DNA of 64,000 nucleotides from IMGVR_UViG_3300033143_006101:124001-188000, one strand, 5' to 3'. Positions 3,210-49,385 are shown, counted from the stretch's first letter. Made by a program: numbers and translations. The notes: generated from the sequence alone by a model not told the origin.

Positions 3210-3256
3210 AAATGCTCTAGCCCGTTTGGGTTAGAGTATCTTTATAAGGAGGTATT

Positions 3257-3484: not shown

Positions 3485-3541
3485 AATTAGTGTTGGATCC
3501 ATAACAGGTCCAGCACCAATTTTATTAGGAGGTGTAACTAA

Positions 3542-4420
3542 ATGTTATTAACTAATAGTTACTTTTCAGGTGCGGGATTATTTGAGATAGGACTCCAGCA
3601 AGGAGGACTAGCACTCCAGCAAAGCTTTGAACTTGATGAGAAGTGCTGCAATACCCACAAGCATAATTTTAATCATGCAGTAGTACAATCAGATATTACA
3701 CAGAAGTTAGCATCAGAGGAGAAAGAGTGTGATGTAATGGTTGCAACTTATCCTTGTAATAAATATTCACCCATTGCTGATATACATGGGGCACGTACCG
3801 GAGACGATTTGTTTCTACATTTCTTCAGGCATATAGCTTTGAAGAAGCCTGAGATTTATGTTGTAGAGAATGTACCCGGGATGAAAAAGTTTCCAGTAGT
3901 TATGGAAGCAATGACTAAACTACCTGATTATTATGTATCAGTATTCTGCCCAGTTGAAACCGAAAATTGGTTACCACAACGCAGGAAGAGATTGATACTG
4001 ATTGGTTCAAGACAGCACTTTCAATGGAGAGAACCAGAACAAGAAAAGAGAATTAAGCTAAAGGATATCTTAGAAGAGAATCCAGAAGTTAATATAGTCA
4101 AAGCTATTGGACAGAGAATGTCCGGTAAATATAGGGACATGCCTATCATTAGTGATCCTAAGAAGGATGATATAGCTCCCACTTGTGTAGCTCATTACTC
4201 TAAAGATTTATCTACTCGTCTTGTGAAAGATGATAGATATGAGTATGGAGTAAGACCATACAGTGTACGTGAGTACGCGAGATTGCAAGGAGTTCCTGAT
4301 TGGTTTGAGTTTACTGGAACAGCAGTCCAGAACTACAAAATGATTGGCAATGGAGTTCCCGTACCTATAGGCGAATGGGTAGCCAGAGAGTTACTCAGAT
4401 ACAAAAAACATAAGATGTAA
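3542..4420 (+). CDS. C5 cytosine DNA methyltransferase (single chain)
   Basis: SYFSGAG, YPCNKYS, ENVPG, PQRRKR, SVREYARLQGVP, IGNGVP. Confidence 0.92.
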   Translation: MLLTNSYFSGAGLFEIGLQQGGLALQQSFELDEKCCNTHKHNFNHAVVQSDITQKLASEEKECDVMVATYPCNKYSPIADIHGARTGDDLFLHFFRHIALKKPEIYVVENVPGMKKFPVVMEAMTKLPDYYVSVFCPVETENWLPQRRKRLILIGSRQHFQWREPEQEKRIKLKDILEENPEVNIVKAIGQRMSGKYRDMPIISDPKKDDIAPTCVAHYSKDLSTRLVKDDRYEYGVRPYSVREYARLQGVPDWFEFTGTAVQNYKMIGNGVPVPIGEWVARELLRYKKHKM

Positions 4421-4474
4421 TTTTATAGGGCTCCAGGATTCCCGGAGCTTTACAAACATTATAAAGGAGGCAAC

Positions 4475-4687
4475 ATGAATTTTATAGAAGTAAAATCGTC
4501 TAACATAGCATCAATTGGACATGACCCAATGACAAAGAAGATGCAAATAATATTTACTAATAGTTCTGTGTATCAATATGATGATGTAACAAAAGATGTA
4601 TTTAATGCATTTGTTAATGCTCCTTCTGTTGGAAGATACTTTCATCAGAATATAAGAAATGCATACACGAACACAAAGATCTCTTAA
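4475..4687 (+). CDS. KTSC domain protein
   Basis: VKSSNIASIGHD...YQYDDV...APSVGRYFHQNIR. Confidence 0.9.
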   Translation: MNFIEVKSSNIASIGHDPMTKKMQIIFTNSSVYQYDDVTKDVFNAFVNAPSVGRYFHQNIRNAYTNTKIS

Positions 4688-4746
4688 AGTATTAGCTATG
4701 GATCCATAGTTAGATCCATAGTCATCACTCTAATTAAGGAGGAGCC

Positions 4747-4986
4747 ATGGATATTATAGGCCAGAAGATTAAAAATGTTCGACACATGACTAAAAAAGAA
4801 TATGAGTATAATGGCTGGGAACCAAATGGGTATGATCCACCAATGGTTATTGTGCTGGAGGATGGCACGTGCCTTTATCCCTCACAAGATTATGAGGGAA
4901 AAGGTCCAGGTGCTATCTTTGGACATAGCCCTAAAGAGAAAGACCCCGAGAAAAAATTCTTTGTCTTATATATAGACAAAAAATAA
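4747..4986 (+). CDS. hypothetical protein
   Basis: ORF with RBS; 'LYPSQDYEGKGPGAIF'. Confidence 0.7.
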   Translation: MDIIGQKIKNVRHMTKKEYEYNGWEPNGYDPPMVIVLEDGTCLYPSQDYEGKGPGAIFGHSPKEKDPEKKFFVLYIDKK

Positions 4987-5040
4987 GTTTTACGAGACTC
5001 TATTCAATAGGGCCTCGCAAGATTTAAATAGGAGGAAGGT

Positions 5041-5502
5041 ATGATACAATATTCTATAAATGAAGAAGTGTGTCCTCACTGTGGAAGTGAAGACATTGAT
5101 AGTATATCACACAAACAAACTGAAGAACATTTGCAGTATCATTATAAATGTAATCAGTGTGGTGAGAAATATCTAAACTTATATACAATTAACTATCACG
5201 GTACACTATATGATGCACCACTTACATATGATGATATAAAACCACCACTCGAATATGAAGATTGTGACTGGTGGTTCTCTATGGACTTACGTCATGCATA
5301 TCCTAATAAAGAATTAGAGTATGGAAATAATACTATCGGTGATATTATAAAGAAGAAACTAAACAGAACTAAACTCAAAGGTAAGTTTGAATTAGACACT
5401 GAATATTCTTGTCTCTATATCTACTTCAAAACACAAGAGGACGGAAATTATTTCATCGATTGGATGAATAAACAACACAGTAAAAAGAAACAAATTGTAT
5501 AA
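5041..5502 (+). CDS. zinc-ribbon hypothetical protein
   Basis: CPHC...CNQC. Confidence 0.65.
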   Translation: MIQYSINEEVCPHCGSEDIDSISHKQTEEHLQYHYKCNQCGEKYLNLYTINYHGTLYDAPLTYDDIKPPLEYEDCDWWFSMDLRHAYPNKELEYGNNTIGDIIKKKLNRTKLKGKFELDTEYSCLYIYFKTQEDGNYFIDWMNKQHSKKKQIV

Positions 5503-5553
5503 GTTTTACAGGAGCCAAAAGGTTCCTGCAAGATTTAAATAAGAGGTAATAAT

Positions 5554-6135
5554 ATGAATATTAATTGGTCACTATGGGAGGTACCCAAACAGAAACACAG
5601 TTCTGCTAACACTTCGATCAATAAAACTCGTGTACCCAAGTTGTTCAAGGTGATAAAAGATAAATTTGGATGGGGATACTTACAATGGAACTTTGATATT
5701 GGTTCTGGTAAGTATATTGATACCATACGGGACTATTTACGAGAACAGTCCACCCAACTTTACTATTATGACCCATTCACAATTGACTGGGAAGATAACA
5801 GAAGAAACCTTATCACCTGTGCTACCAAAGGCGGGGCACACACAGTCACTGTTAGTAACGTGTTGAATGTTATCAAGGAGAAGAGGAATCAAACCCGAGT
5901 AATACAACAAGCACATGTTATGTTAAGACCCGGACCTAGAATAACTTCTGATGGTCGTATGGTTCCTAGCACAGCTTACTTCTCCGTGTACTCTAAACAA
6001 GGATGTGGTGTTGGTGAAGAGACTAAACCTGACTGTTGGCAGTCTAACAAAACAATACACGAATATCTCCCAGAAGTAAAAAAGATCTTTGGTAACGTAG
6101 CGATCAAGTATGGTATAATTATAGCAACCAAGTAA
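5554..6135 (+). CDS. putative class I SAM-dependent methyltransferase-like protein
   Basis: FDIGSGKY (SAM motif I-like), YDPF, SNVLNVI. Confidence 0.6.
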   Translation: MNINWSLWEVPKQKHSSANTSINKTRVPKLFKVIKDKFGWGYLQWNFDIGSGKYIDTIRDYLREQSTQLYYYDPFTIDWEDNRRNLITCATKGGAHTVTVSNVLNVIKEKRNQTRVIQQAHVMLRPGPRITSDGRMVPSTAYFSVYSKQGCGVGEETKPDCWQSNKTIHEYLPEVKKIFGNVAIKYGIIIATK

Positions 6136-6187
6136 ACGTAAGCTAACTCTATATTAGAGTTGGCTCATTTTTATTTAGGAGGATCTT

Positions 6188-6370
6188 ATGATAACAAACA
6201 CTGAAGTCAAAACTATCACCCCGATCAGTTATAATATTTGTCCTCATTGTAACACGGTGCAATTTATATATATAATATCTTATATTAAAAACAAACAAAA
6301 AGGTATTGTAATAGGTTGTAAACAATGCATAAAAGATCGAACAGAGATAAACATTAAAAAACAGTCTTAA
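6188..6370 (+). CDS. small Cys-rich protein
   Basis: CPHC...GCKQC; AGGAGG RBS. Confidence 0.55.
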   Translation: MITNTEVKTITPISYNICPHCNTVQFIYIISYIKNKQKGIVIGCKQCIKDRTEINIKKQS

Positions 6371-6417
6371 GCCTGTTTAAAATAGACAGGCTTAATATTA
6401 TTTTAGGAGGTAATATT

Positions 6418-6615
6418 ATGTTAGCTATAGGAACAGTAACAAACGTAACAGCAACAGGATTAAATTCAGTAGAATTACAACGTAATGGAAAAATATTAGG
6501 AACATGGAATTGTGATGTGAACATTCCTTATCCACATCTATATAGATTTGAAGAACAAGATCAATTCTGTTACCCAGTAGATTTAAATACTATAGAACAA
6601 CAAATGGAGGACTAA
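6418..6615 (+). CDS. hypothetical protein
   Basis: ORF with AGGAGG RBS. Confidence 0.6.
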   Translation: MLAIGTVTNVTATGLNSVELQRNGKILGTWNCDVNIPYPHLYRFEEQDQFCYPVDLNTIEQQMED

Positions 6616-6616
6616 T

Positions 6617-6994
6617 ATGACTGAACTTACATTTACTAAAAGAGTCATAACCCAACTAGAACAATCTTATAGCAAAGAGATTAGTTTAATAAATTATGTT
6701 GAAGATAGGAATTGGGGAATGTTTACAAAAGCTGGTGATAAATCCATAACTAATAAAGCCTTGGGTTTGATTAAGAAATTGGAGAAGGCTAAAACAACAA
6801 CTCAAAAGTTTAATGCTCTTACAGCATTCTTACGCTCGTATCGTCGAATGGGCTCCACTAAAACAATGAGTGAAGCATCTGATACAGCTGTTAGAGAATG
6901 TGTAGGATCCTTCTTTGACAAAGTTTGTATTGCAGTTGGCATAGGCCAAAGCACTGCTGATGAAATTTGGGAAAGTCCTGAGAGTGGTTATTAA
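6617..6994 (+). CDS. hypothetical protein
   Basis: ORF with GGAGG RBS. Confidence 0.7.
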   Translation: MTELTFTKRVITQLEQSYSKEISLINYVEDRNWGMFTKAGDKSITNKALGLIKKLEKAKTTTQKFNALTAFLRSYRRMGSTKTMSEASDTAVRECVGSFFDKVCIAVGIGQSTADEIWESPESGY

Positions 6995-7047
6995 AATACC
7001 CTAGCCCCTTCCAGGGGTCTGGGCAATTTAATAAAGGAGATGATATT

Positions 7048-7072
7048 AAAAAACCCTTCCGTTAGGAAGGGT
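7048..7072 (-). terminator. intrinsic terminator
   Basis: acccttcc-taac-ggaagggt followed by T-run on minus strand. Confidence 0.75.
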
Positions 7073-7152
7073 CTACCCGTTTATCTCACAATCTCGGAAA
7101 CAGGAGGTTTCGGTTTGTAAGCGGGACAATATCACAAGAGAATTTTGAGTTA
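7048..7152 (-). ncRNA. candidate ~105-nt small RNA with anti-SD (CCUCCU) hairpin
   Basis: Flanked by a TTGACT-17-TATATT promoter and an intrinsic terminator; no ORF; hairpin gaaac-CUCCU-guuuc. Confidence 0.55.
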
Positions 7153-7159
7153 TATATAA

Positions 7160-7188
7160 AATATAATGGGACATAAGATAAAAGTCAA
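7160..7188 (-). promoter_or_regulatory. sigma70-type promoter
   Basis: TTGACT-17 bp-TATATT. Confidence 0.6.
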
Positions 7189-7241
7189 CAATTTTTTTCA
7201 TTTTGTATAAAAAAATAAGTAACTTTTTTGTGGTTTTTTTG

Positions 7242-7269
7242 TTGACAAATCGCTTATTTTTTTTATATT
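7242..7269 (+). promoter_or_regulatory. sigma70-type promoter (divergent from previous)
   Basis: TTGACA-16 bp-TATATT with AT-rich upstream region. Confidence 0.6.
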
Positions 7270-7352
7270 AATAGGTGACATATAAAAAGAATGGAGATGC
7301 TGGTCACAAACTAGCAACATTATATTAATTTAAATTTAATAGGAGGGTAATT

Positions 7353-7856
7353 ATGAGCAAATTACCTGAACCTACTATAGACACAGTTAAGTCTAGAGTA
7401 GAAACGAATCTGCTTAATGATGGGTTTTTGCATCCATATGCTATTCTATGCACATTTAAAGATAAAAATGTTGGAGTGGGAATAAGCACTCCTCATAATA
7501 CAGATACAAAAACAATTAATGTATCTAGATTATTGGTAGCTTTAGATCAAATTGAGACATATAAAGTATTATTGATACATGAAGCATGGAAATATATTAA
7601 ACCAGATAACATGGATGAAACAGAATTTGCAGAAACTATGAAAGACAAAGCGATGTGTGAATTCTTAGATAAGAGAGAAGGATATATGATAACTGAGGTA
7701 ACAAGAGACAGTGTTAAGACAGGCGTAAGAGAATATCATAAAACAGAATATGATACTATAGGTTTTGTGGGAGATTTACTAATCACTAATGATAATGAAA
7801 AAGCATCTCCTTATGGATATGAGCAGATCCAGGATAAATTAGTAACAAGAAATTAA
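7353..7856 (+). CDS. hypothetical protein
   Basis: ORF with AGGAGG RBS downstream of promoter. Confidence 0.7.
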   Translation: MSKLPEPTIDTVKSRVETNLLNDGFLHPYAILCTFKDKNVGVGISTPHNTDTKTINVSRLLVALDQIETYKVLLIHEAWKYIKPDNMDETEFAETMKDKAMCEFLDKREGYMITEVTRDSVKTGVREYHKTEYDTIGFVGDLLITNDNEKASPYGYEQIQDKLVTRN

Positions 7857-13365: not shown

Positions 13366-16300
13366 TTACATCTTTCTTTTATTTAGATTAGGTAACACAT
13401 TCTTTCTAACAACTATCGTTTCTCCAAAGACACCTTCTCCACTTATAGACATACCACCGAGAGGAGCCTGCCCCCATATTGCACCATGAGGATTATGCTC
13501 TGCTTGTTGCATTACTTCATACGCAGAAGCAATAGATTTTATTGTAGGTAATGAAATTTTGTGCGGTAGAATATGCTGCCCATGTACAGTCTGTCGTATA
13601 TAATCTTCATAACAAAACCAACACACACGACATACAGCATCAGCATAGTCTTTAGAACCTTGTGGTGGGTGATCCAATCTCTTTCCTTTTATTAACGTCA
13701 ATTGTTTTAACTCATGTATCAATGTTTCATAATCAGGGCATTGCTTGGGCAATTCTATTTGCCCTTGATATATAAGTTGTTTTAAAACCTCATACATTTC
13801 TAAATTAGCCCCAACTTGTTCTACATAAATACCCTCAGAAAAAAGTCTTTGTATAGACTCTACACTACTCCATCTATCATATCCAACTTTCCCTACATTA
13901 AAATTATCACATATTAATTTAATAACTTCTTCTACATTACTAAAAGATACCGTTATTCTATTCTCTGGATCCGGAGCCCATCCAGTTATAAGATCTATTA
14001 CAACTTTTAATCTTACAGATTCTTTATCTACCCCATCCTTTTCTCCTACTTTAACAGGAGATTCTTCTATATGTCCCATAGCTAACGTAAAATGGTCACG
14101 TTTCTCGCCCTGGTCCACACAAACATAATATTTATTTATCTGATCCTGTGCTAAAGGCAGTGCTTTCTTACCTATATAAATCCTAAATACTATACCTTCA
14201 TCAGTCTGCAGTTGTTCTTCGATCATTTTCTCTGAGAAAAGAACTAATGCATCTCCTTCTGTTAGTACCTTATCTATTCTTTCAGGAAATTCAAAGAAAG
14301 GATTGATTGTTGCCGGAGGTATAGCTAAATAGTCACGTCGATATGTCTCGGGATTTTGTATTCTTTCACTTTCAAAGTCTTCTCCCTCAATAAAACCACT
14401 AGGATTAGCTTCTGTTTTAGGACTCAACTCAAAAGTAGTTGCATGCATACCATATAAATTAGGTACCTTTCTATCCATCTTTTCACGCATAGCACCTACT
14501 ACTACAGACTGTGCTCCTACGTAACAGGTACCAGACATGGCTAATAGTTGCATAGTATAATCGTCTTCAAACATGGGAGAGGAAATAACTACTATCTTAC
14601 TTACTTTCTTAAGGTTAGATACTGATCTAGATACAGTGGAATAAACCGCATTAGCAGAACGAGTCTGAGACTTGGCAGCAACAGCTCCTTCTACTACATC
14701 AAAACGACTAAGCTCATCCAATACTACACAATAACTTGTCTTACCAGCCAACGCAGAAGAGTTAGAGTGCAGGGATAACATAGCCAATCGTCTTTCCGGA
14801 AATTCCACAGCTTGTTTAAGCCTTTGGAATAGTGTATGCTTTCCCTCATTGGCTTCTCTCTCTTTTAAGTACGCGAAATACTTTACCCACCAATTCTTCT
14901 TATCAATAATACTTTCTATATGAGCAAATACAGTTTCTTTAGCCTGGATTTCAGAAGAGGCTATACATTGTCCAGTTAATCTTGATGGCTCTAAACCAAA
15001 TTCTACTGCCGGATCCGGGAACTGTAACATATACTGTGTCATATATGTCATAATTACAGCTGCAATATAAGAATTGTGTGTTACTGTACCATCAGCTAAA
15101 CAAAATAAATTATCTTTATCTACTCCAATCCCCGCATATTCTCCCTCACCAATCGATTCTACTTTAATAGAAGATAAATAATTTTCCCTATTGGACTGTT
15201 TCCCATTGTGTATATACTGTTTATATTTAATCTTGCAAGGTATCTCCCATACATCTCCATATATTGAGATTCTCCATGTAGTTCCCTCATAACCTTCAAC
15301 TTGACATGTTGTTTTCTTTTTCTGTATATGAGTTCTATATCCAAGTGTATCAGCTAATCTTTTCACATCATTAGCTAATTGTTCATTAGATAATGCTATA
15401 TCATAACCATGCCTATCAGCTCGATGATGCCCATCAGTATCTATAATTCCTGCCAATACCTCCAATCTAATTTCCTTACTATTTGAAATATAACATTGGG
15501 GAATATGTTTATTACTAACAAGACTTAATTTTTTAAACTCTTCCCACAAGGGGTTTAATAACCCAGAAGTTTTACATAAACGATAATTAGCAGATTTATT
15601 ATTTCTTTTATCTGATATGGAAAGCTTTAAGTTATTCTTAGCACAATAATCTTCTAACCACTGCACTATTTCAATATCCGCTGATGTAATAATGGGTTGT
15701 TTAGAAAAACCATCTCCAAGCCAAACTCCTATCAAATAAGGATCAATAGGAACAGGTTGTTCTGAAAAAGTAATTAATCCAGCTTTATATCCTCTAAAAA
15801 AATATTTCCACTTATCCGATTTCTTTAAATAATCTTTTATAGAAATATTAACAACATCAGGCTCATTCGGATATCTTCCATTTGGTTGTCGATTAGACCT
15901 ATCATCTCTAGCAGACTGAGTTTTTTTTAGTGAAAGAATATGATATTCGTTTACTGTATAATTATCTGCTTGAGATTGATGTATCTCAAACAATTCAGAT
16001 GCCCCCCGCGAAGTTTCTAACACAGTCCGTGAAATAGAATCTGGACCCATAACCAAATCACCTACTTTAATATCTTTAGCCTTTTTTAATGTCCCATCAA
16101 ACATTAAAATATTCTGGTCAATTTGGACACATTTACCTCCACGCATACCGGCACACAGAACACCCTGATCAAACTTATTCTTATCTCCTACTTTAGAAAA
16201 TAACTCCTCTAAAAACTTTCTTTGCAGAGCTCGTAGTTTAATCCCTAAATATTCTTTGGATTCAGCATACTCAATGATGTCAGCTGTATGCTTTACTGGG

Positions 16301-16407
16301 CATTTCACTATCTTTTTAGCAAAATAAGGAGTTTCTATAGTAGAATGTGCTGTGTCTTGTGGGATATAATTAGAATTTAATAATTTATCACCTAAACCCA
16401 TAATCAC
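13366..16407 (-). CDS. terL: terminase large subunit, intein-containing
   Basis: Walker A GMRGGK|S split by intein; Walker B VVLDE; C-terminal nuclease 'CVDQG...D', 'YDRW', 'DHPPQGSKDYADA'. Confidence 0.88.
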   Translation of the reverse strand: MIMGLGDKLLNSNYIPQDTAHSTIETPYFAKKIVKCPVKHTADIIEYAESKEYLGIKLRALQRKFLEELFSKVGDKNKFDQGVLCAGMRGGKCVQIDQNILMFDGTLKKAKDIKVGDLVMGPDSISRTVLETSRGASELFEIHQSQADNYTVNEYHILSLKKTQSARDDRSNRQPNGRYPNEPDVVNISIKDYLKKSDKWKYFFRGYKAGLITFSEQPVPIDPYLIGVWLGDGFSKQPIITSADIEIVQWLEDYCAKNNLKLSISDKRNNKSANYRLCKTSGLLNPLWEEFKKLSLVSNKHIPQCYISNSKEIRLEVLAGIIDTDGHHRADRHGYDIALSNEQLANDVKRLADTLGYRTHIQKKKTTCQVEGYEGTTWRISIYGDVWEIPCKIKYKQYIHNGKQSNRENYLSSIKVESIGEGEYAGIGVDKDNLFCLADGTVTHNSYIAAVIMTYMTQYMLQFPDPAVEFGLEPSRLTGQCIASSEIQAKETVFAHIESIIDKKNWWVKYFAYLKEREANEGKHTLFQRLKQAVEFPERRLAMLSLHSNSSALAGKTSYCVVLDELSRFDVVEGAVAAKSQTRSANAVYSTVSRSVSNLKKVSKIVVISSPMFEDDYTMQLLAMSGTCYVGAQSVVVGAMREKMDRKVPNLYGMHATTFELSPKTEANPSGFIEGEDFESERIQNPETYRRDYLAIPPATINPFFEFPERIDKVLTEGDALVLFSEKMIEEQLQTDEGIVFRIYIGKKALPLAQDQINKYYVCVDQGEKRDHFTLAMGHIEESPVKVGEKDGVDKESVRLKVVIDLITGWAPDPENRITVSFSNVEEVIKLICDNFNVGKVGYDRWSSVESIQRLFSEGIYVEQVGANLEMYEVLKQLIYQGQIELPKQCPDYETLIHELKQLTLIKGKRLDHPPQGSKDYADAVCRVCWFCYEDYIRQTVHGQHILPHKISLPTIKSIASAYEVMQQAEHNPHGAIWGQAPLGGMSISGEGVFGETIVVRKNVLPNLNKRKM
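15073..16131 (-). mobile_element. intein (353 aa) with LAGLIDADG homing endonuclease
   Basis: starts CVQIDQ, ends VTHN followed by Ser; 'GVWLGDG' and 'LAGIIDTDG' blocks. Confidence 0.95.
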
Positions 16408-19801: not shown

Positions 19802-20881
19802 TTAAATGTTAAAGTCTTCTTCAAATACGCCGTCTTCTAACTCAGATAGATCTAAAATATCTTCTTTAGCTTTTTTTTCTACAAATCGTTTTTCGTCCCT
19901 TTTTAAATTATTGATTCTTGATTGTAGTACTCGTGGAAGTTTGAGCCCTGCATTAATCATAGTAACTCTAACAACATCATCTAACATAGGATCTGCAAAC
20001 ATTCCTAATCGTGATATTGCACTACCACATACTCTCTTTGTTATATCGAATATTTTCTTAGCTTCTTTAGTATATATTTTTTTCTTAGGTATATCTATGC
20101 CTATTAAGTAAGCTAAAGTAGACTTATATGTATATCCCTCAGCCAATGAAGGCTTGAATATTTTTTTAAGCAGGTCTTTATCTTCTGTTCTAAAATCAGC
20201 ATGATAAAAGTACATTGTTCTAATATCTACCATTCCATTACCATACTGCAGGACTCTCATAATCTCACCCTTATCTATGGATCCAATACCTGCCTGAGTA
20301 ACTTTCCCCTCACGCAATAATTCAAATGCAGATTTTACTTCTATTACTATATGATTATTAATCTCTTCCCACCAATCATTACCTATACCTTTACTTTGCA
20401 TGAGGTACTCATTATCTGCAAGCATAAACATGTTAATCTTTAAGTCTTTTAATTGTTTCAATGTTTTTAATGAATTATCTGCAGCAAGTATTCCTTGCAT
20501 TCGTGGAGGGAGAGTAGCAATACAACCAGTGGAAATCTTTTTTTTATTTAAATAATTTATAATGAGCGGAGCAGCACTACCTCCTGTTCCTCCTCCTAAC
20601 CCACAAATAACCAAGATTAATTTATTAGGATCTATATTAGCTTCTATAAAAGCTTCAAACTCTTTCCAATGTTTTTTTAATAAGCTTTTACCTTTAAGAG
20701 GAGAACCCCCGGTTCCACTAGTACCTAACAATAATAATTTTCTAGCATCAATAAAAGTTCCCCGAACATCTAACTCATCAGAATTTATATAATAAGTATC
20801 CACTCCTAATTTTGCAAATTTCAAGCCAATTCTAGTACCGCATTGACCACAACCAATAACTTGCAAAGCATTTTCTATCAT
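19802..20881 (-). CDS. tubulin/FtsZ-family GTPase (PhuZ/TubZ-like)
   Basis: GCGQCGTRI, GTGG, GLGGGTGGS signature, ADNE; acidic C-terminal tail. Confidence 0.9.
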   Translation of the reverse strand: MIENALQVIGCGQCGTRIGLKFAKLGVDTYYINSDELDVRGTFIDARKLLLLGTSGTGGSPLKGKSLLKKHWKEFEAFIEANIDPNKLILVICGLGGGTGGSAAPLIINYLNKKKISTGCIATLPPRMQGILAADNSLKTLKQLKDLKINMFMLADNEYLMQSKGIGNDWWEEINNHIVIEVKSAFELLREGKVTQAGIGSIDKGEIMRVLQYGNGMVDIRTMYFYHADFRTEDKDLLKKIFKPSLAEGYTYKSTLAYLIGIDIPKKKIYTKEAKKIFDITKRVCGSAISRLGMFADPMLDDVVRVTMINAGLKLPRVLQSRINNLKRDEKRFVEKKAKEDILDLSELEDGVFEEDFNI

Positions 20882-35286: not shown

Positions 35287-35880
35287 CTACATTCTCCTTA
35301 TATGAAATCTATTAGTTATTATATAATTATTCTTCACTTGACTTTCAAAGTAATCATCAATGACCATAGTAGCAAAATTAACCATAAAATGTATGAAAGG
35401 AATTGCACTTCTTACTTCACAGATATCTTCTGCATCCGGATCCACACTTCCAGGTACAGTGTACTTCTCATCCCATGTTACTTCCCCTGACAATTCCGGA
35501 GAGAAGCCTATATGCAAGCAAGCAACATCTTTAGATAATTCAGCCACTAGACTTCTGGATTCTTTATTATCAAAACAATCCAATACTAACACATCCTTTT
35601 TATCAATACCATCTAAAATATCAATTATGTCCGTAAACTTTTCTATCTTCTTTTGAATGGGAGTATACTTCATCTTTCTCACAAACCTCGGGAACACTGC
35701 CTGCATAGCCATTGTCTTATACAATCCAATATGCTCTAAAAAATAGGGTTGAATAGGAATATTTCTGTCCTCTACCTCATCACAATCCACCCCAATATAC
35801 TCAAAATCTGAATACTTTTTAGCTAATTGAAGTAATAAATTCCCTCCCAATGCTCCTAACCCCATTACACATATTAACAT
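35287..35880 (-). CDS. ThiF/MoeB (E1-like) adenylyltransferase
   Basis: GLGALGG, DCDEVEDRNIPIQ, GLYK, DCFDNKESR, 'DICE' Cys. Confidence 0.88.
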   Translation of the reverse strand: MLICVMGLGALGGNLLLQLAKKYSDFEYIGVDCDEVEDRNIPIQPYFLEHIGLYKTMAMQAVFPRFVRKMKYTPIQKKIEKFTDIIDILDGIDKKDVLVLDCFDNKESRSLVAELSKDVACLHIGFSPELSGEVTWDEKYTVPGSVDPDAEDICEVRSAIPFIHFMVNFATMVIDDYFESQVKNNYIITNRFHIRRM

Positions 35881-36715: not shown

Positions 36716-37219
36716 TCATATCTCCACTTTTATAATTTCTCCTTCAGGAGATAGCTCAGCTTCAATAGGATCCTCAAAGTCAGCCATCATACCTTCATAT
36801 ACTCCTTGCCATGTCTCTCTACTCTGCCCTTTAGGATCATTCATTCTATTATCAACATTATTCTGAGTCTCAGTAAAATGAACTAATACTATCTTCATAT
36901 TCACACCACGATCTTGCCGAGCCATATCTACCAAATCTATCCAATCAAGTCTCTTCTTTCTAATAATATTCGTTTCATCTATAATAATATTAAAACCATA
37001 ATCGAATGCTGTTGTCACAATATCATAACAAGCTGATCGTATAAATGGTTCATACTTTTTATCAAAAACATACTTCCCTTTTATCATTGCTCTAAGAGAA
37101 TCTCTATTTACAATCACAACATTGTCCTCTTTAGCTTTTTCTTTAGCCCAGGTACTTTTTCCAGAACCTATTATACCACATAATATATAAACAGTTACAT
37201 CAGGTGTGTTTTCACTCAT
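36716..37219 (-). CDS. P-loop kinase (AAA_33, polynucleotide kinase-like)
   Basis: GIIGSGKST, NRDSLR, IIDETN. Confidence 0.8.
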   Translation of the reverse strand: MSENTPDVTVYILCGIIGSGKSTWAKEKAKEDNVVIVNRDSLRAMIKGKYVFDKKYEPFIRSACYDIVTTAFDYGFNIIIDETNIIRKKRLDWIDLVDMARQDRGVNMKIVLVHFTETQNNVDNRMNDPKGQSRETWQGVYEGMMADFEDPIEAELSPEGEIIKVEI

Positions 37220-41963: not shown

Positions 41964-42402
41964 TTGTATGTTCTATCCCCAATTTTAAAATATCTCTTAC
42001 TTCCATAAGAAGCATACCTAACATATTCCTACCTCTACCATTACAAATACCCCAATAAGTATCATCCCAATTATTACCTTCTATTAATTCTAAATTATGA
42101 GTATCTAATAATCGTTCTTTTAGATCAGAATGCTGAGTAAATTTAAGTAAAAGACCTAAATACATTATACTATCTTTTACCTTTTCTCAATCTTCACGCA
42201 TTCTTACTTTTCTACCTAAACGTTTCGCACTTCCAGGTCCGGGTACTCGCCTTATCTCTTCATGATCAGCTTCGAATTTAGCTTTATGAGACTGAAAAAA
42301 ATGTTCATTAGTAGGATACATTTTACCATTATAAATCATTTCTGCTTTATAAAAATTAGACAGAAAATCATAAATACCTGAAAAATTATCGATATTTTCC
42401 AT
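41938..42402 (-). pseudogene. NADAR (YbiA-like) protein interrupted by in-frame TGA
   Basis: FLSNFY, EHFFQ..K, AKRLGR, RED*EKVKD (stop at conserved Trp, 42187-42189), KFTQH, LIEGN.W.D.YWG, GRNMLG. Confidence 0.85.
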
Positions 42403-42534
42403 TACCTCTTCTCCTGCTCTTAAGCTCTTGTAATACTTCATCTTTTAATTAATCATTCGATATAGTATTAAAATAATCTAGTAATAAGCATAACTCATAA
42501 TGTGCATAATGCTTTAAACACTCTATCTTATTTT

Positions 42535-42964: not shown

Positions 42965-44617
42965 TTATTTTAATTTTATAGACTCATACCACCGTGGGAG
43001 TTCAAGAAGAGGAGTACCCATAATGTCATCAATTATAGACATTGCTCCCCTCATAGCATCCCGTACTGCTTGAGCTACTAAAGCACTTTCAGTTAATGTA
43101 TTAGGATCCACTCTACTAACAGGTATTCCTACAGCTTCGAGAGAATCAGATAGCCTTTCTCTACGAGTAGTAATTGTTCCTGGTGGAAACATTATTACCA
43201 CTGCAGCTTTAGGGCGACCAAGCCCCTTCTCATCACAGTTTTCAACTATTTGTCTGATAACACCAGTATTGTGATCTTCATCTGTAAGATAAATATCAAT
43301 TTCACAATTTAATTTACGAGCATCTTCATACCATGACAAACAATTTGTTCCATGACCACCACAATGAATACCATACAACCTTGCCATGAATGCATCCTTT
43401 TCAAATGTTTCAGGTAGATCTAACTCCCTCTTATCATCATCAAATAATCCCCAATGAAAATTCTCTTCTGGATTCTTAATGCATTCTGCTATAATAGAAC
43501 CACGTTCCTTAGCAAAGTTAATTGCATGCATCATAGAAGGGCTTGCATCTATATGAACAAACACTTTACCAAGATCACCTACAATTTCTTTTCTTTTGTC
43601 AGCACGAGCTTTCTTAAGTTCTTTACTAACATCTGCATCTACTTCAGTAGTAATTTTATCTACACGATCTAAAGCAGTCTTAGCAGTTTTAATCTTCTCT
43701 GTAAAGACTTCCATTATTTCCTTATCTTTAAGCAAACCTTCTTTATCAAAAAGTTCACGATAAATAACTGCTTGATCACCACTACATTGTTCAAGTACTG
43801 CAGCTGCAATAACTGGCGATATCTTTTTATTCAAAGCACCCAGTACACCCTGAGGTTTTAACTTCTCCTCACGGATCTTTTCTGCTATTGCAAGATCACT
43901 AAGCCCCTTGAAATTAAAGATTTCACTTTTCTCCGCAACTCTTCCGTCCTTTTGATCCCATCCAAACACAGCAACGGCTTCATCAGAAGGAGCTATATGC
44001 AAAGCCCTATACATATTCAACATAATCTTAGTAAAAGCTGCTTTTTTAATTCCTTCCAAAGCTTTTGGATTCTGTTCACGAAAACGAATATACTTCTTAC
44101 ATGCATTTTTAAGACTACGAGCGAAGTGTGTACCTTCTTTATACCTTGCACCAAGTGGCATCTTGAGATTTGCTATCGTAATCAAACGAGACACTAACTT
44201 TGGATCCATAGTTAATACAGCAGCCTGGGCAACTCTACGATAATTAGGTTTTTTATAATCACTGCCTTCTGAGAAAGGTGTACCATCTGCATCACTCAAA
44301 GAATTGATAAATGTAGATAGAACTTTTAAATCCTTTCCATCAGATTTAGTTATAGCCCAGCTGTTAAAATGAGCTAAAAAGACAGGATCTTGATCAGCAA
44401 GAGTTATAAAAGTATCAAGTATAGGTTGTAACCTTTGCTCTTGTACTTCAGGCACTTCTGTTATAGTCCCATCTGGATTACGCCGTTTTCTCATAATAGT
44501 CTGTCCATTCTGCAGGGTGTTCTTAGACCATACATGTGTACATCCACTGATAATTGTTTTATAAACATCTAAACGAGTTTCGTCGTTCAGATAAGCGAGT
44601 TGATTCTCTTGTGCCAT
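42965..44617 (-). CDS. Ro60/Rsr-like TROVE-vWA RNA-binding protein
   Basis: helical N-terminus with 'DPVFLAH', 'RSLKNA', 'RALHIAP'; C-terminal vWA MIDAS DASPS...T...TD; Y-RNA-like gene directly upstream. Confidence 0.7.
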   Translation of the reverse strand: MAQENQLAYLNDETRLDVYKTIISGCTHVWSKNTLQNGQTIMRKRRNPDGTITEVPEVQEQRLQPILDTFITLADQDPVFLAHFNSWAITKSDGKDLKVLSTFINSLSDADGTPFSEGSDYKKPNYRRVAQAAVLTMDPKLVSRLITIANLKMPLGARYKEGTHFARSLKNACKKYIRFREQNPKALEGIKKAAFTKIMLNMYRALHIAPSDEAVAVFGWDQKDGRVAEKSEIFNFKGLSDLAIAEKIREEKLKPQGVLGALNKKISPVIAAAVLEQCSGDQAVIYRELFDKEGLLKDKEIMEVFTEKIKTAKTALDRVDKITTEVDADVSKELKKARADKRKEIVGDLGKVFVHIDASPSMMHAINFAKERGSIIAECIKNPEENFHWGLFDDDKRELDLPETFEKDAFMARLYGIHCGGHGTNCLSWYEDARKLNCEIDIYLTDEDHNTGVIRQIVENCDEKGLGRPKAAVVIMFPPGTITTRRERLSDSLEAVGIPVSRVDPNTLTESALVAQAVRDAMRGAMSIIDDIMGTPLLELPRWYESIKLK

Positions 44618-44645: not shown

Positions 44646-44780
44646 ATGGCAGTTCAAGTTGTAAAAATAGTTTTTTCAGTCCTCAAAACTGATGCTCTAC
44701 CCAACTGAGCTAATTACCGAATGGTTGGTAATGAGAGATTTGAACTCTCGGCTTGTATATTCTTACGATGGAACTGCCAT
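44646..44780 (-). ncRNA. Y RNA-like 1: bulged-C stem enclosing a circularly permuted tRNA (T arm, closed acceptor, D arm, anticodon arm)
   Basis: AUGGCAGUUC(C)A/UGAACUGCCAU; gagag-UUCAAAU-cucuc; auuacc-aaccauuc-gguaau; UAGCUCAGUUGGGUAGAGC; ucagu-uuugagg-acuga. Confidence 0.85.
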
Positions 44781-44787
44781 ATATAAA

Positions 44788-45078
44788 TCATCCTGCTTCA
44801 CTATTAGGTATTACATAGATATTGTGTCTATCTTCAGCTCTATGAATCTTATATATCCAACCAGTCCTATCATCCTTTATGTCTTTATCAAATACTTCAA
44901 CAAGCACCGGGCGAATTGTCTCAAGAATTTCTTCATCCGTAGAATCAAAAGAAAGCCCCAAATCACTAAGATCCCTTTGATAATCCTGTCTTTGAATAGG
45001 TACAATAAGCTTGTTACGAGCACCATCATCAAGAGGCGTAAGCTCTATTGTTGCAGGAACATTATTTTCAGTTGTCAT
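44788..45078 (-). CDS. putative ubiquitin-like (beta-grasp) protein
   Basis: 96 aa, beta-beta-alpha-beta-beta pattern, ends IYVIPNSEAG; near E1 and JAB genes. Confidence 0.55.
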   Translation of the reverse strand: MTTENNVPATIELTPLDDGARNKLIVPIQRQDYQRDLSDLGLSFDSTDEEILETIRPVLVEVFDKDIKDDRTGWIYKIHRAEDRHNIYVIPNSEAG

Positions 45079-47945: not shown

Positions 47946-48087
47946 ACAGTAGTTCAAGTTGGTATATTTAAGCTGGATCAGTGGTAAGCCCGTATAACCC
48001 CAGGCCCCTGGGCTTTTAGTCCTTGCGAGACTACGTTGCTATAAACAACGCTTTTGTGCTTGTAAAATATACCTGTGGAACTACTGC
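47946..48087 (-). ncRNA. Y RNA-like 2: bulged-C stem enclosing a three-hairpin non-tRNA domain
   Basis: GCAGUAGUUC(C)A/UGAACUACUGU; ggUAUAUUU/AAAUAUAcc; UACAAGC motif. Confidence 0.75.
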
Positions 48088-48156: not shown

Positions 48157-48232
48157 ATAGGGAGTCCAAGTTTATATTACACGTCAAGTAACCCGAAGAT
48201 AACTTGTAGGTAACATATATGAAACTCCCTAT
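48157..48232 (-). ncRNA. Y RNA-like 3: minimal 76-nt form
   Basis: AUAGGGAGUUU(C)A/UGGACUCCCUAU; UACAAG motif; AACUU 3' internal loop; abuts tRNA-Met 3' end. Confidence 0.7.
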
Positions 48233-48308
48233 TTGCAGGAGAGAGATTCGAACTCCCGTATGACCTTGGTTATGAGCCAAGCGACCTAGCCAGCTGGTCT
48301 ATCCTGCA
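48233..48308 (-). tRNA. tRNA with CAT anticodon (Met, or Ile2)
   Basis: TGCAGGA/TCCTGCA acceptor, cttgg-CTCATAA-ccaag, GTTCGAATC T-loop; CCA not encoded. Confidence 0.88.
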
Positions 48309-48603: not shown

Positions 48604-48804
48604 TTAAGTCACACGAACCGCTACTGCTCGTGGTCCTTTATCTCCTTGCTCAGTATCAAATTCCACTGCATCTCCTTCATTTAATGTTTTAAATCCAGTA
48701 CCTTCAATACTACTATGATGTACAAAAATATCATTTCCATCATCATCTGTAATAAAACCAAAACCTTTTTTCTCGTTAAACCATTTTACTTTACCTTGCG
48801 ACAT
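48604..48804 (-). CDS. cspA: cold-shock domain protein
   Basis: [34 protein letters not shown]. Confidence 0.95.
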
Positions 48805-48853
48805 ATTTTTACCTCTATTGCTTAAATTCAACCCGTTGAATCCAACTGGTTAT

Positions 48854-48989
48854 TCGGGGAAGAAGGAGTTGAACCTTCGACATTCAGTTTCCAAATGCTT
48901 GTAAGATAATATTATGGGAACCTAAAAGGTTCAAGTTATACCATCTAGAAAACAACACACTGAGACTCTACCTACTGAGCTATTCCCCG
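48854..48989 (-). ncRNA. Y RNA-like 4: tRNA-Pro-like body with 63-nt Y module inserted in the anticodon loop
   Basis: CGGGGAA/UUCCCCG-A acceptor, D and T arms intact; insert 48896-48958 contains AACUUGAACC-uuuu-aGGUUCC and UACAAGC; UUUGGAA precedes the 3' anticodon strand. Confidence 0.8.
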
Positions 48990-48997
48990 TTTATTTT

Positions 48998-49128
48998 AAA
49001 GGAGTTCAAGTAATAGTTGCAATTAGTTTGCAAGTGAAAGATTTGAACTTTCGACCTAAAGTTTAATAGACTTTTGCTCTACCAACTGAGCTAATTTGCT
49101 TGTAAGCAACTATATAGGAAACTCCTTT
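48998..49128 (-). ncRNA. Y RNA-like 5: Y stem enclosing a complete unpermuted tRNA-like cloverleaf (49028-49100, anticodon ATT)
   Basis: AAAGGAGUUUCC/UGAACUCCUUU; auaguugc/gcaacuau; UAGCUCAGUUGGUAGAGC; aaagu-CUAUUAA-acuuu; gaaag-UUCAAAU-cuuuc. Confidence 0.8.
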
Positions 49129-49154: not shown

Positions 49155-49289
49155 TTATCCATTAACTTTACACATACTTTTCGCTACAAGTTCTCTTATT
49201 AATTCAGAAATACTTTTTGCTTCTTCAAATGCCTTTTTCCGAAGAAAAGCATGTTGTTCATCTTCAAATATAATAGTTGTTTGTTTCAT
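49155..49289 (-). CDS. ribbon-helix-helix protein, 44 aa, not in ORF track
   Basis: hand translation MKQTTIIFEDEQHAFLRKKAFEEAKSISELIRELVAKSMCKVNG. Confidence 0.7.
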   Translation of the reverse strand: MKQTTIIFEDEQHAFLRKKAFEEAKSISELIRELVAKSMCKVNG

Positions 49290-49356
49290 CTTAGCAACCC
49301 CAAATCTCTTCATCTTTTCGTCTATAGCTAATTATTTATATATATGATTATACAAC

Positions 49357-49385
49357 AATATAATCAAGATACATAATATTGTCAA
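49357..49385 (-). promoter_or_regulatory. sigma70-type promoter heading the RHH / Y RNA / cspA unit
   Basis: TTGACA-17 bp-TATATT. Confidence 0.75.

What the first reader, a model, noticed from the sequence alone, without database searches (positions are those of the whole stretch)
44646..44780. Y1: circularly permuted tRNA opened at the variable loop, keeping its anticodon arm and an internal ACCA
Seen: the 5'-3' order is Y stem, T arm, acceptor 3' strand, loop containing ACCA, acceptor 5' strand (CGGUAAU), D arm, anticodon arm (ucagu-UUUGAGG-acuga), Y stem. It fills the gap between the Ubl stop and the Ro-like RBS. Known: canonical YrlA replaces the anticodon arm with the Ro-binding stem. 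Here that stem instead occupies the variable-arm position, so all four arms remain. Inference: a non-chargeable full tRNA mimic that could decoy anticodon nucleases, or be cut in the ACCA loop to expose a CCA end.
Basis: partly seen in the sequence, partly recalled or inferred. Interest (0 to 1): 0.8.

Follow-up and report, generated by a model that had tools for sequence, protein, structure and literature searches.

The report
Phage Y RNA with whole tRNA
A jumbo-phage gene for a small structured RNA joins a Ro-protein-type docking stem to a complete but circularly rearranged tRNA look-alike; it belongs to an undescribed family of at least 33 such RNAs found near a divergent Ro60-like gene, and this extends the known YrlA type of tRNA mimic, though its function is untested.

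Summary
On the minus strand, 44780-44646 folds (z = -5.4) into a 10-bp basal stem, an internal loop, a 9-bp second stem and a five-way junction. The junction carries, in order, a T arm, an acceptor stem closed by a loop containing ACCA, a D arm and a 5-bp/7-nt anticodon-type hairpin.

At least 33 distinct homologues share this order, and all six helices covary. tRNA position 15 covaries with the base just before the T stem in 20 of 21 cases. That places the basal stem in the variable region, not at the anticodon stem as in YrlA.

The downstream 550-aa protein has no Pfam hit, but its model matches Ro60/TROVE structures over its full length.

The RNA misses the Rfam YrlA threshold (29 vs 69 bits) and lacks the YrlA GNCGAA motif. 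It has its own invariant signature: a C after the 5' strand, ACUY before the 3' strand, and UACAAGC.

About a third of family members, this one included, carry N73-CCA in exact register, a 7-position acceptor stem (here 6 pairs plus C1.A72) and U at -1. This resembles an RNase P/3'-end processing site. Others are capped by UUCG or GNRA loops.

Most likely it is a Y-type RNA partner of the phage Ro-like protein. The decoy and chargeable-tRNA readings remain untested. It is a new variant of a known kind.

The parts
44771..44780 (-). Basal (Y-type) stem, 5' strand AUGGCAGUUC
   Evidence: Pairs with 44646-44655. The helix is 95.4% paired with compensatory changes in 10/10 pairs.
44767..44770 (-). 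Internal loop, 5' side, CAUC; its first C is invariant in the family
   Evidence: C in 66/66 distinct scaffold copies.
44758..44766 (-). Stem 2, 5' strand
   Evidence: Pairs with 44661-44669. The helix is 94.2% paired with 8/8 pairs compensatory.
44750..44757 (-). Linker UACAAGC plus C. UACAAGC is a near-invariant family motif; the last C acts as tRNA position 48.
   Evidence: The motif is present in 65-66 of 66 scaffolds. The base before the T stem covaries with position 15 in 20/21.
44733..44749 (-). T arm, GAGAG-UUCAAAU-CUCUC
   Evidence: The helix is 99.2% paired. The T loop reads UUCRANU in 32/33.
44726..44732 (-). Acceptor stem, 3' strand AUUACCA (positions 66-72)
   Evidence: Six pairs plus C1.A72. 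In the family, 37 of 44 modules have 7/7 pairs.
44720..44725 (-). Acceptor loop ACCAUU: discriminator A73, C74-C75-A76, then UU with U at -1
   Evidence: NCCA in this register occurs in 12 of 44 acceptor modules (11 of 42 distinct loops by the register), against 0.6 expected from shuffles. U at -1 in 14/15.
44713..44719 (-). Acceptor stem, 5' strand CGGUAAU (positions 1-7)
44693..44712 (-). U8-A9, D arm GCUC-AGUUGGGUA-GAGC, A26
   Evidence: Matches the tRNA model. GG is in the D loop in 33/33 and A14 in 21/21.
44676..44692 (-). Anticodon-type arm UCAGU-UUUGAGG-ACUGA (U33, triplet UGA, G37)
   Evidence: 98.4% paired, 5/5 pairs compensatory. The loop is 7 nt in 31/33.
44670..44675 (-). Linker AAAAAC between the anticodon-type arm and stem 2
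   Evidence: Its length varies from 3 to 24 nt in the family.
44661..44669 (-). Stem 2, 3' strand
44656..44660 (-). Internal loop, 3' side, AACUU (family signature A-C-U-Y)
   Evidence: A in 55, C in 64, U in 64 and U/C in 63 of 66. The same AACUUG stands in the Rfam YrlA consensus.
44646..44655 (-). Basal stem, 3' strand GAACUGCCAU
42965..44617 (-). Gene of the 550-aa Ro60-like protein (TROVE-type ring plus vWA domain with a DxSxS MIDAS motif), the presumed protein partner
   Evidence: AF2 model has pLDDT 83.5. The 12 best Foldseek matches are all Ro60/TROVE, E from 1e-8 to 8e-6. The family profile hits human RO60 at 4e-7. D357/S359/S361 are invariant.
44788..45078 (-). Gene of a 96-aa protein ending ...IPNSEAG. 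It is conserved upstream of the Ro-like gene and fused to it in some phages.
   Evidence: tblastn finds it in 38 distinct sequences from 39 loci. It forms one ORF with the Ro-like gene in L028, L034, L039, L042, L044/45, L067 and L081. The model is beta-beta-alpha-beta-beta; the best PDB match is a Ubl domain at E = 0.4, which is not significant.

Best explanation
Y1 is a real gene for a structured non-coding RNA of the Y-RNA kind, made of two modules. Module 1 is a docking handle: a 10-bp stem formed by the 5' and 3' ends, an internal loop with an invariant C on one side and ACUY on the other, a second 8-9-bp stem, and an invariant single-stranded UACAAGC. By inference, this handle binds the Ro60-like ring protein encoded immediately downstream. 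Module 2 is a complete tRNA body in circularly permuted order (T arm, acceptor stem closed by a loop, D arm, anticodon arm) that folds into the tRNA L-shape. The handle leaves the body at the variable region, as the long variable arm of a class II tRNA does, so both the elbow and the anticodon end stay exposed. By analogy with YrlA, the tRNA body is the effector end: it brings a tRNA-binding protein to the Ro-like ring, or occupies that protein. In the subclass to which Y1 belongs, the acceptor loop carries the marks of a tRNA end-processing site: a 7-position acceptor stem (7 pairs in most members, 6 pairs plus C1.A72 in Y1), N73-CCA in exact register, and U at -1. It may therefore be nicked by RNase P and trimmed to a two-piece RNA with a free CCA end, as was shown for M. 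smegmatis YrlA. Shown here: the fold, its conservation, the tertiary 15:48 pair, the Ro60 fold of the neighbouring protein, and the gene linkage. Inferred: binding to the Ro-like protein, cleavage, and the identity of the effector.
For: Fold and significance. An independent consensus fold with compensatory changes in 32/34 pairs. All six helices covary in 26 sequences (92.2% paired against 58.9% shuffled; slid controls 34-47%). Thirty-three distinct complete members have GG in the D loop in 33/33, a UUCRANU T loop in 32/33 and a 7-nt anticodon-type loop in 31/33. R15:Y48 covaries in 20/21, with 0 of 5000 shuffles reaching that. When un-permuted in silico, 23/26 are called tRNAs by ARAGORN. In native order none is called, apart from one odd overlapping 99-nt call in L095. 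The partner protein has a Ro60 fold. Linkage: a type-P RNA lies within about 45 nt upstream of the Ro-like start codon in the window and 9 other loci (a tenth, L002, has a mini-scaffold there). Twenty-five of 69 Ro-like loci have scaffold RNAs within about 2.5 kb. All 3 verified viral contigs with the RNA also encode the protein. Where the small upstream ORF is fused to the Ro-like gene, the RNAs lie downstream instead. Handle motif conservation. AACUUG is shared with the Rfam YrlA consensus, and there is a sub-threshold YrlA hit at E = 4e-4. Processing marks. Precedent for RNase P cleavage plus CCA completion of a Y RNA with a 7-bp acceptor stem: PMC4201824 and bioRxiv 10.1101/312249. Phage Ro60 binding phage-encoded Y-like RNAs: PMC12135203.
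Against: No binding, expression or cleavage data exist for this RNA. No sequencing run was listed for the window. In the one metatranscriptome laid on a relative, no contig covered the permuted RNA. The handle lacks the GNCGAAN0-1G motif of bacterial Y RNAs, and the protein is too divergent for Pfam TROVE, so Ro-type recognition is an extrapolation. Forty-four of 69 Ro-like loci, mostly the more distant relatives, show no such RNA in their flanks. The loop between A76 and C1 is only 2 nt here, which may be too tight for RNase P. The positionally equivalent RNAs in the L021-L026/L069 group are capped by short loops without CCA, so a free end cannot be the family's common requirement. The same handle also flanks ordinary, probably functional tRNAs, which points to a role in tRNA handling that the YrlA analogy does not explain.
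Confidence: 0.6

Rival explanations
1. Decoy for tRNA-targeting host defences. The complete anticodon arm presents a bait to anticodon nucleases or other tRNA-cleaving defence enzymes. The Ro-like ring either sequesters the enzyme or feeds the damaged RNA to repair or decay.
For: The anticodon-type hairpin is kept under selection (98.4% paired, 7-nt loop in 31/33, U33 in 25/31, purine 37 in 29/31), while the triplet is free to vary: 21 different triplets in 31 loops, and several different ones within one array. The setting is a phage, and Ro/TROVE proteins in jumbo phages are discussed as part of RNA-repair systems (PMC7824862).
Against: No nuclease, ligase or RtcB gene was found next to the locus. 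The nearest candidates are a P-loop kinase, an HD protein and a NADAR protein several kb away. The triplets show no clear enrichment for the classic targets. Six of 31 loops lack U33. There is no experimental link.
Confidence: 0.2
2. The handle is a built-in tag by which the Ro-like protein chaperones, quality-controls or helps process the phage's own tRNA transcripts. Y1 and the other permuted copies would then be regulators or competitors derived from tandem tRNA junctions, not effectors in their own right.
For: The same handle flanks at least 17 normal-order tRNAs called by ARAGORN, including window 48998-49128. It also occurs as a capped hairpin in place of the anticodon loop of a normal-ended tRNA at 48852-48991. 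In the distant relative Rctr197k the Ro-like gene directly follows 34 tRNA genes. Junctions of adjacent tRNAs score about 32 bits against the core of the model, as the dimeric-tRNA origin model predicts (bioRxiv 10.1101/312249). A cold-shock-domain gene lies inside the RNA cluster. Animal Ro60 binds misfolded precursor RNAs (PMC12135203 introduction).
Against: The permuted copies are themselves under strong structural selection, including the acceptor helix formed within one unit (7/7 pairs in 37/44). One of them occupies the conserved site directly upstream of the Ro-like gene. This is not what is expected of by-products.
Confidence: 0.2
3. A true permuted tRNA gene. After cleavage at the acceptor loop, the two pieces stay paired through the long stem and act as a chargeable, decoding tRNA with anticodon UGA, like a two-piece permuted tmRNA.
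For: All tRNA arms and core contacts are present, and ACCA is encoded in register with U at -1. ARAGORN accepts the un-permuted form as tRNA-Ser(UGA). Arrays of up to 10 handle-bearing RNAs (4 of them complete permuted copies, each with a different triplet) resemble a tRNA set.
Against: Six of 31 family loops have A at position 34 (triplets AUA, ACA, AUG, AUU, AGG) and six lack U33, which is unlike decoding tRNAs. Sixteen of 44 acceptor stems are capped by 3-5-nt loops without CCA. Linkers of 6-8 nt or more and a roughly 20-bp stem at the variable position would have to fit the ribosome. Y1 has a C1.A72 mismatch and A73. The test for descent from tRNA-Ser was inconclusive.
Confidence: 0.08
4. 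A cis-acting leader of the Ro-like mRNA. The structure, bound by the Ro-like protein or cut by a double-strand-specific RNase, sets translation or stability of the downstream gene.
For: The 3' end of the stem lies 14 nt from the Shine-Dalgarno sequence. No promoter-like or terminator-like site separates it from its neighbours. The basal helix can extend by about 11 more pairs reaching towards the ribosome-binding site, and the L021 group has a comparable extra outer helix.
Against: Homologous RNAs occur downstream of the gene, in arrays, and 60 kb away on the same genome. That fits trans-acting RNAs. A regulatory hairpin does not need a full tRNA core with a covarying Levitt pair.
Confidence: 0.1
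5. A decayed relic of a tandem tRNA duplication, or a chance fold, with no function.
For: tRNA-tRNA junctions resemble its core.
Against: Compensatory changes occur in 36 of 38 pairs across sequences that share only about 60% identity. The handle motifs are invariant. Synteny is conserved.
Confidence: 0.02

Closest known systems
YrlA (Rfam RF02553; Chen et al. 2014, PMC4201824; S. Typhimurium structure, bioRxiv 10.1101/312249)
   Same: Encoded next to a Ro60-type gene. The 5' and 3' ends form a long stem. The permuted order is T arm, closed acceptor stem-loop, D arm. The tRNA elbow and Levitt pair are conserved. AACUUG stands on the 3' side of the basal stem.
   Different: In YrlA the Ro stem continues from the anticodon stem, and there is no anticodon loop. 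Here the anticodon arm is a separate 5-bp/7-nt hairpin and the stem leaves from the variable region. There is no GNCGAAN0-1G motif; instead an invariant C, ACUY and UACAAGC. The score is 29 bits against a threshold of 69. The partner protein is a far more divergent TROVE relative.
M. smegmatis YrlA (PMC4201824)
   Same: A 7-position acceptor stem (a full 7 bp in M. smegmatis and most members of this family). There, the loop is opened by RNase P and the 3' end is completed to CCA, leaving two halves bound to Rsr. The NCCA subclass here has the same prerequisites.
   Different: Here the CCA is already encoded, the anticodon arm is present, and cleavage is untested.
D. radiodurans Yrn1 (PMC4201824)
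   Same: A Y RNA that can be drawn with an anticodon-type arm.
   Different: In Yrn1 the arm between the T and D elements takes the anticodon position. Its loop has 6 nt, the D arm is doubtful and there is no variable arm. Here the cloverleaf is complete.
Circularly permuted tRNA genes of Cyanidioschyzon and some archaea (as summarised in bioRxiv 10.1101/312249), and two-piece permuted tmRNA genes (from my own knowledge)
   Same: The 3' half lies before the 5' half. The acceptor ends are joined by an intervening stretch that begins after the CCA.
   Different: Those are matured into working tRNA or tmRNA. The algal and archaeal ones need a bulge-helix-bulge cut and ligation, for which there is no sign here. 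The break there is not in the variable region, and no Ro-type handle is involved.
Class II tRNAs (Ser, Leu, Tyr) with a long variable arm
   Same: Five helices around the core, with the extra helix leaving between the anticodon stem and position 48. Several members have a 3-bp D stem, and the triplet UGA occurs 5 times.
   Different: The extra helix here is about 20 bp, is joined through linkers of 6-8 nt or more, and holds the RNA's own ends. Similarity to E. coli tRNA-Ser(UGA) was not distinctive.
Thermus phage phiLo Ro60 with Yrl1/Yrl2 (PMC12135203)
   Same: A phage Ro60 homologue with Y-like RNAs encoded just upstream, shown to bind them. Its structure (9kop) is the best structural match of the protein here.
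   Different: The phiLo RNAs are described as stem-bulge-stem RNAs with a CGAA motif. The terms 'tRNA-like', 'anticodon' and 'YrlA' do not occur in that paper.

Membership tests
YrlA (RF02553) | Encoded beside a Ro60/Rsr gene | tested here: met
   The RNA ends 29 nt before the start of a protein whose model matches Ro60/TROVE structures.
YrlA (RF02553) | Reaches the Rfam gathering score | tested here: not met
   29.1 bits against 69. The alignment stops at 44673 and uses half of the anticodon-type hairpin as the closing strand, with unpaired positions.
YrlA (RF02553) | Permuted order: T arm, closed acceptor stem-loop, D arm | tested here: met
YrlA (RF02553) | The Ro-binding stem continues from the anticodon stem; there is no anticodon loop (bioRxiv 10.1101/312249) | tested here: not met
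   A separate covarying hairpin with a 7-nt loop is present. The stem joins at the variable region.
YrlA (RF02553) | GNCGAAN0-1G motif in the basal stem (PMC4201824) | tested here: not met
   The 5' strand reads ...GUUC CAUC. The family invariants are C, ACUY and UACAAGC.
YrlA (RF02553) | tRNA core nucleotides and Levitt pair | tested here: met
   GG in the D loop in 33/33, T loop in 32/33. A14 in 21/21 and R15:Y48 in 20/21.
YrlA (RF02553) | Bound by Ro/Rsr; carries tRNA-type modifications | not testable with these tools
   Needs immunoprecipitation and modification mapping.
tRNA (RF00005), working tRNA | Contiguous cloverleaf found by tRNA finders | tested here: not met
   ARAGORN finds none here. 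Rfam gives two half matches of 23.2 and 17.5 bits, below the threshold of 29. Only the un-permuted construct is accepted.
tRNA (RF00005), working tRNA | Four arms, 7-position acceptor stem, 7-nt loop with U33 and purine 37 | tested here: met
   The acceptor has 6 pairs plus a C1.A72 mismatch.
tRNA (RF00005), working tRNA | Free 3' CCA end and aminoacylation | not testable with these tools
   ACCA is internal in the gene. Processing is unknown.
tRNA (RF00005), working tRNA | Anticodons typical of decoding tRNAs across the family | tested here: inconclusive
   Six of 31 loops have A34 and six of 31 lack U33, but most loops are tRNA-like.
Permuted tRNA genes (algal/archaeal type) | Ends held in a bulge-helix-bulge motif for cutting and ligation | tested here: not met
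   The stem has one symmetric internal loop (4 x 5 nt) and no staggered 3-nt bulges. The phage's replication genes are of bacterial type.
Permuted tRNA genes (algal/archaeal type) | 3' half before 5' half, acceptor ends joined by a spacer | tested here: met
Ro60/TROVE proteins (the partner) | HEAT-repeat ring plus vWA fold | tested here: met
   Foldseek ranks 1-12 are all Ro60/TROVE, aligned over 512-606 columns, TM about 0.45-0.54.
Ro60/TROVE proteins (the partner) | Pfam TROVE (PF05731) match | tested here: not met
   No Pfam or PHROG family for the single sequence. The family profile hits human RO60 at 4e-7, mainly in the vWA part.
Ro60/TROVE proteins (the partner) | MIDAS motif DxSxS in the vWA domain | tested here: met
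   D357, S359 and S361 are invariant in 38 sequences.

The most novel reading that the evidence does not exclude
These phages own a modular 'Y-handle' system. One protein-docking scaffold is grafted onto tRNA bodies at three different places: the variable region (Y1), the acceptor end, and the anticodon loop. The NCCA-bearing permuted copies are opened by RNase P into two-piece, CCA-ended tRNA-like molecules, possibly aminoacylated, that ride on a Ro-like ring. This would be an RNP linking Ro to tRNA surveillance or translation, or serving as a programmable panel of baits against anticodon-specific host nucleases.
Probability: 0.2. Interest if true: 0.9.

Novelty: new variant of a known kind. 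Interest (0 to 1): 0.72.

Why it matters
Y RNAs with a tRNA-like module are known, but their effector is not. The known ones lack the anticodon arm and, as a rule, a free CCA end.

A family that keeps every tRNA arm, shows two clear acceptor-end designs (capped, or NCCA plus spacer) and varies its anticodon triplet gives sharp, testable handles on what the tRNA module is for.

It also provides natural intermediates for the proposal that YrlA-type RNAs arose from tandem tRNA transcripts.

It reveals a large Ro60-like protein family that domain databases miss: 186 homologues passed E <= 0.001 among the 8,000 candidates scored.

It shows that standard tRNA and Rfam scans overlook these genes in large phage genomes.

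Tried and rejected
- Pfam, PHROGs and a single-sequence PDB search on the 550-aa protein gave nothing. Only the family profile and the predicted fold identified it.
- blastn of the locus against GenBank phages found no match. tblastn found one distant relative, Rctr197k at 24% identity, with no handle RNA.
- Descent of the tRNA body from tRNA-Ser was tested. E. coli serT was the best match for the L021 D-plus-anticodon segment by only one point over unrelated phage tRNAs. The window's D arm is closest to the phage's own handle-flanked tRNA. The result is inconclusive.
- Is the encoded CCA a mere relic? Normal-order tRNA genes in these loci sometimes encode CCA and sometimes do not; none of the three in the window does. 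This is not decisive.
- Expression: no run was listed for the window. Contigs of a metatranscriptome cover a handle-flanked tRNA of L017 at about ten times the depth of coding parts, but not the permuted RNA. Contigs cannot show ends.
- Two pattern scans of the viral collection were run. All pattern-only hits outside three Ro-like-encoding contigs were chance matches, with no model hit, no tRNA and no Ro-like gene.
- The weak model hit at 48775-48926 was rejected as a unit, because its 3' part lies in a cold-shock-protein gene.
- 'Ubl' for the 96-aa protein is plausible from its beta-grasp-like topology, but no match was significant.
- Pairing of UACAAGC with the ACUUG strand was considered and dropped, because the L021 group has ACUCG without compensation.

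Full report
**What is there.** The finding lies on the minus strand.
- a 10-nt strand, then CAUC;
- a 9-nt strand, then UACAAGCC;
- a T arm with loop UUCAAAU;
- AUUACCA, the loop ACCAUU, then CGGUAAU;
- UA, then a D arm with loop AGUUGGGUA;
- a hairpin UCAGU-UUUGAGG-ACUGA, then AAAAAC;
- the partner of the 9-nt strand, AACUU, and the partner of the 10-nt strand.

It occupies the 170-nt gap between the stop of a 96-aa ORF (44790-44788) and the start of a 550-aa ORF (44617), whose GGGAGGAG lies 14 nt after the RNA. The minimum-energy fold is exactly this five-way junction, with z = -5.44 and no shuffle folding as well.

Standard tools miss it. ARAGORN calls nothing here and Rfam at gathering scores calls nothing. 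With relaxed thresholds the best hits are YrlA at 29.1 bits (threshold 69) and two half-tRNA matches of 23.2 and 17.5 bits.

**The neighbour is a Ro60-type protein.** The 550-aa protein has no Pfam, PHROG or direct PDB match. It does have many homologues (186 with E <= 0.001 among the 8,000 candidates scored), all unnamed. A profile of 38 of them hits human RO60 at 4e-7 and shows an invariant DxSxS motif. The AlphaFold model (pLDDT 83.5) has Ro60/TROVE structures as its 12 best Foldseek matches over nearly its full length: Thermus phage phiLo Ro60, Xenopus and human Ro60, and Deinococcus Rsr. The window is part of a 252,876-bp viral contig with bacterial-type replication genes and a tubulin homologue.

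**Homologues.** Protein-guided retrieval gave 93 loci. Ten RNAs of the same build, upstream of the Ro-like gene, were aligned with MAFFT. RNAalifold then recovered both basal stems, the T arm, the acceptor stem and the anticodon-type hairpin, with compensatory changes in 32 of 34 pairs.

A covariance model built from this alignment found 125 matches at E <= 1, often several per locus. A second model gave 70 matches at E <= 1e-6.

On the 26 best, 92.2% of cells pair (58.9% shuffled; 34-47% when partners are slid), and 36 of 38 pairs show changes on both sides. The anticodon-type hairpin is 98.4% paired with all five pairs compensated. That alignment is fitted to the model, but one search was not.

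Thirty-three distinct RNAs have the complete permuted build:
- D loop with GG in 33/33;
- T loop UUCRANU in 32/33;
- anticodon-type loop of 7 nt in 31/33;
- U33 in 25/31 and purine 37 in 29/31;
- 21 different triplets, with UGA five times.

When the arms are put back into tRNA order in silico, with the long stem replaced by five of its own linker bases, ARAGORN of 26 as tRNAs. In native order it calls none, apart from one odd 99-nt overlap.

**Where the stem joins.** In the 21 members with an unambiguous D-arm register, A14 is invariant. Base 15 pairs in the Levitt manner with the base immediately before the T stem: G:C 11 times and A:U 9 times, so 20 of 21. No shuffle out of 5000 reached this. 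That base is therefore position 48, and everything between the anticodon stem and it (linker, stem 2, basal stem, UACAAGC) is an insertion in the variable region.

In YrlA the stem continues from the anticodon stem and there is no anticodon loop (consensus; bioRxiv 10.1101/312249). In Deinococcus Yrn1 the arrangement differs again (PMC4201824). This is therefore a third topology.

**The handle.** Across 66 distinct copies:
- the base after the 5' strand is C in 66/66;
- the four bases before the 3' strand are A-C-U-Y (55, 64, 64 and 63 of 66);
- the closing pair is C-G;
- UACAAGC is essentially invariant.

AACUUG also stands in the Rfam YrlA consensus. From memory, a bulged C and CUUG mark the Ro site of animal Y RNAs. 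The bacterial GNCGAA motif is absent.

**The acceptor end.** With a 7-position register, 37 of 44 distinct modules have 7/7 pairs, and the modules fall into classes. Sixteen are capped by loops of 3-5 nt, among them UUCG, GCAA and GCAG. Twelve carry N73-CCA in exact register, followed by 0-75 nt of mostly A/U-rich spacer. Four carry N73-CC. By the register, NCCA at positions 73-76 occurs in 11 of 42 distinct loops; shuffling gives 0.6 on average and never more than 5. The base before position 1 is U in 14 of 15.

A seven-pair stem was named as the reason why M. smegmatis YrlA, alone among those tested, is cut by RNase P and receives CCA in vivo (PMC4201824). That 3' RCCA and U at -1 favour bacterial RNase P is from my own knowledge. 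Y1 is in the NCCA class but has only UU as spacer and a C1.A72 mismatch. Cleavage of this particular copy is therefore uncertain; I put it at about 0.35-0.4.

**Linkage.** A permuted RNA lies within about 45 nt upstream of the Ro-like start in the window and nine other loci; a tenth, L002, has a mini-scaffold there. Twenty-five of 69 Ro-like loci have handle RNAs in their flanks, mostly those whose protein is at least 47% identical to the window's.

The 96-aa ORF is conserved upstream in 39 loci and is fused to the Ro-like protein in eight of them. In at least five of those eight the RNAs lie downstream instead.

In the viral collection only three contigs hold a verified permuted RNA, and all three encode the protein, once 60 kb away.

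**Interpretation.** I conclude that Y1 is a Y-type RNA whose handle docks on the Ro-like protein and whose effector end is a complete tRNA mimic (confidence 0.6). Binding, expression and cleavage are inferred, not shown.

The decoy idea fits the free-running triplets but has no direct support. A decoding role is unlikely, given the A34 triplets, the loops without U33 and the capped members.

A serious alternative is that the handle serves the handling of phage tRNAs. The same handle encloses normal-order tRNAs and, as a capped hairpin, replaces the anticodon loop of a normal-ended tRNA. A distant Ro-like gene also follows a 34-tRNA array. Junctions of neighbouring tRNAs resemble the core of the model, as the dimeric-tRNA origin model for YrlA predicts.

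**Novelty.** Six searches of the paper library and the five papers whose text was searched describe no Y RNA with a retained anticodon arm or a stem at the variable position. Rfam 15 has no family for it. No cultured phage carries it. It is a new variant of a known kind.

Noticed in passing
window 48998-49128 (-): The same handle (basal stem, CCUAUA / UUACUU internal loop, stem 2, UACAAGC) encloses a normal-order tRNA, called tRNA-Asn(AUU) by ARAGORN at 49028-49100. UACAAGC overlaps its acceptor 5' strand. At least 17 such handle-flanked tRNAs occur in related loci.
   Followed up: partly
window 48852-48991 (-): Rfam's 'tRNA with a 68-nt insertion' is a tRNA with normal ends. Its anticodon loop is replaced by the handle as a hairpin capped by UUU, in inverted connectivity. 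This is the YrlA topology permuted back to tRNA order (fold z = -3.2).
   Followed up: partly
window 48158-48231 (-) and 47946-48087 (-): Two more handle copies. One is a 74-nt mini version with only a short hairpin inside, starting 2 nt after tRNA-Met (48233-48308). The other has a non-tRNA insert. L002 has a similar mini version directly upstream of its Ro-like gene.
   Followed up: partly
window 48604-48831 (-), 49155-49313 (-), 49357-49385 (-): A cold-shock-domain protein gene (Pfam CSD, 3e-28) sits inside the RNA cluster. A small RHH-like ORF and an 11/12 sigma-70-like promoter lie just upstream of the cluster.
   Followed up: partly
window 44788-45078 (-) and 35287-35880 (-): The 96-aa protein ends in a conserved P-x-S-x-A-G, often followed by 1-4 residues. 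It has a beta-beta-alpha-beta-beta model and is fused to the Ro-like protein in eight of the fetched loci. A ThiF-family (E1-like) ORF lies 9 kb away. Whether the small protein is a ubiquitin-like partner of the vWA/MIDAS domain is open.
   Followed up: partly
L046 115-1620; L034 4211-5464: These are tandem arrays of up to ten handle-bearing RNAs of mixed type (permuted, normal-order, other), each with a different anticodon-type loop. In L034 they are followed by six plain tRNA genes that encode CCA.
   Followed up: partly
L020 1509-1774; L079 2170-2399: These are permuted members with very long acceptor 'loops' (129 and 79 nt). The L079 loop contains a second UACAAGC. The nature of the inserts is unknown.
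   Followed up: no
L107 (KX853510.1, Virus Rctr197k) 1827-7689: A 24%-identical Ro-like ORF, annotated only as a misc_feature, directly follows an array of 34 tRNA genes. No handle is present.
   Followed up: partly
L017 1100-1342: In an activated-sludge metatranscriptome, a contig over the handle-flanked tRNA has word depth 23.5, against 2-4 for coding parts of the same phage. This is a hint of high RNA abundance, not proof of transcription.
   Followed up: no
window 13366-16407 (-), 19802-20881 (-), 36716-37219 (-), 42187-42441 (-): A 1013-aa ORF with Hint and LAGLIDADG domains (intein-like), a tubulin/FtsZ-family gene, a P-loop kinase of the AAA_33/KTI12 type, and a short NADAR-domain ORF.
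   Followed up: no
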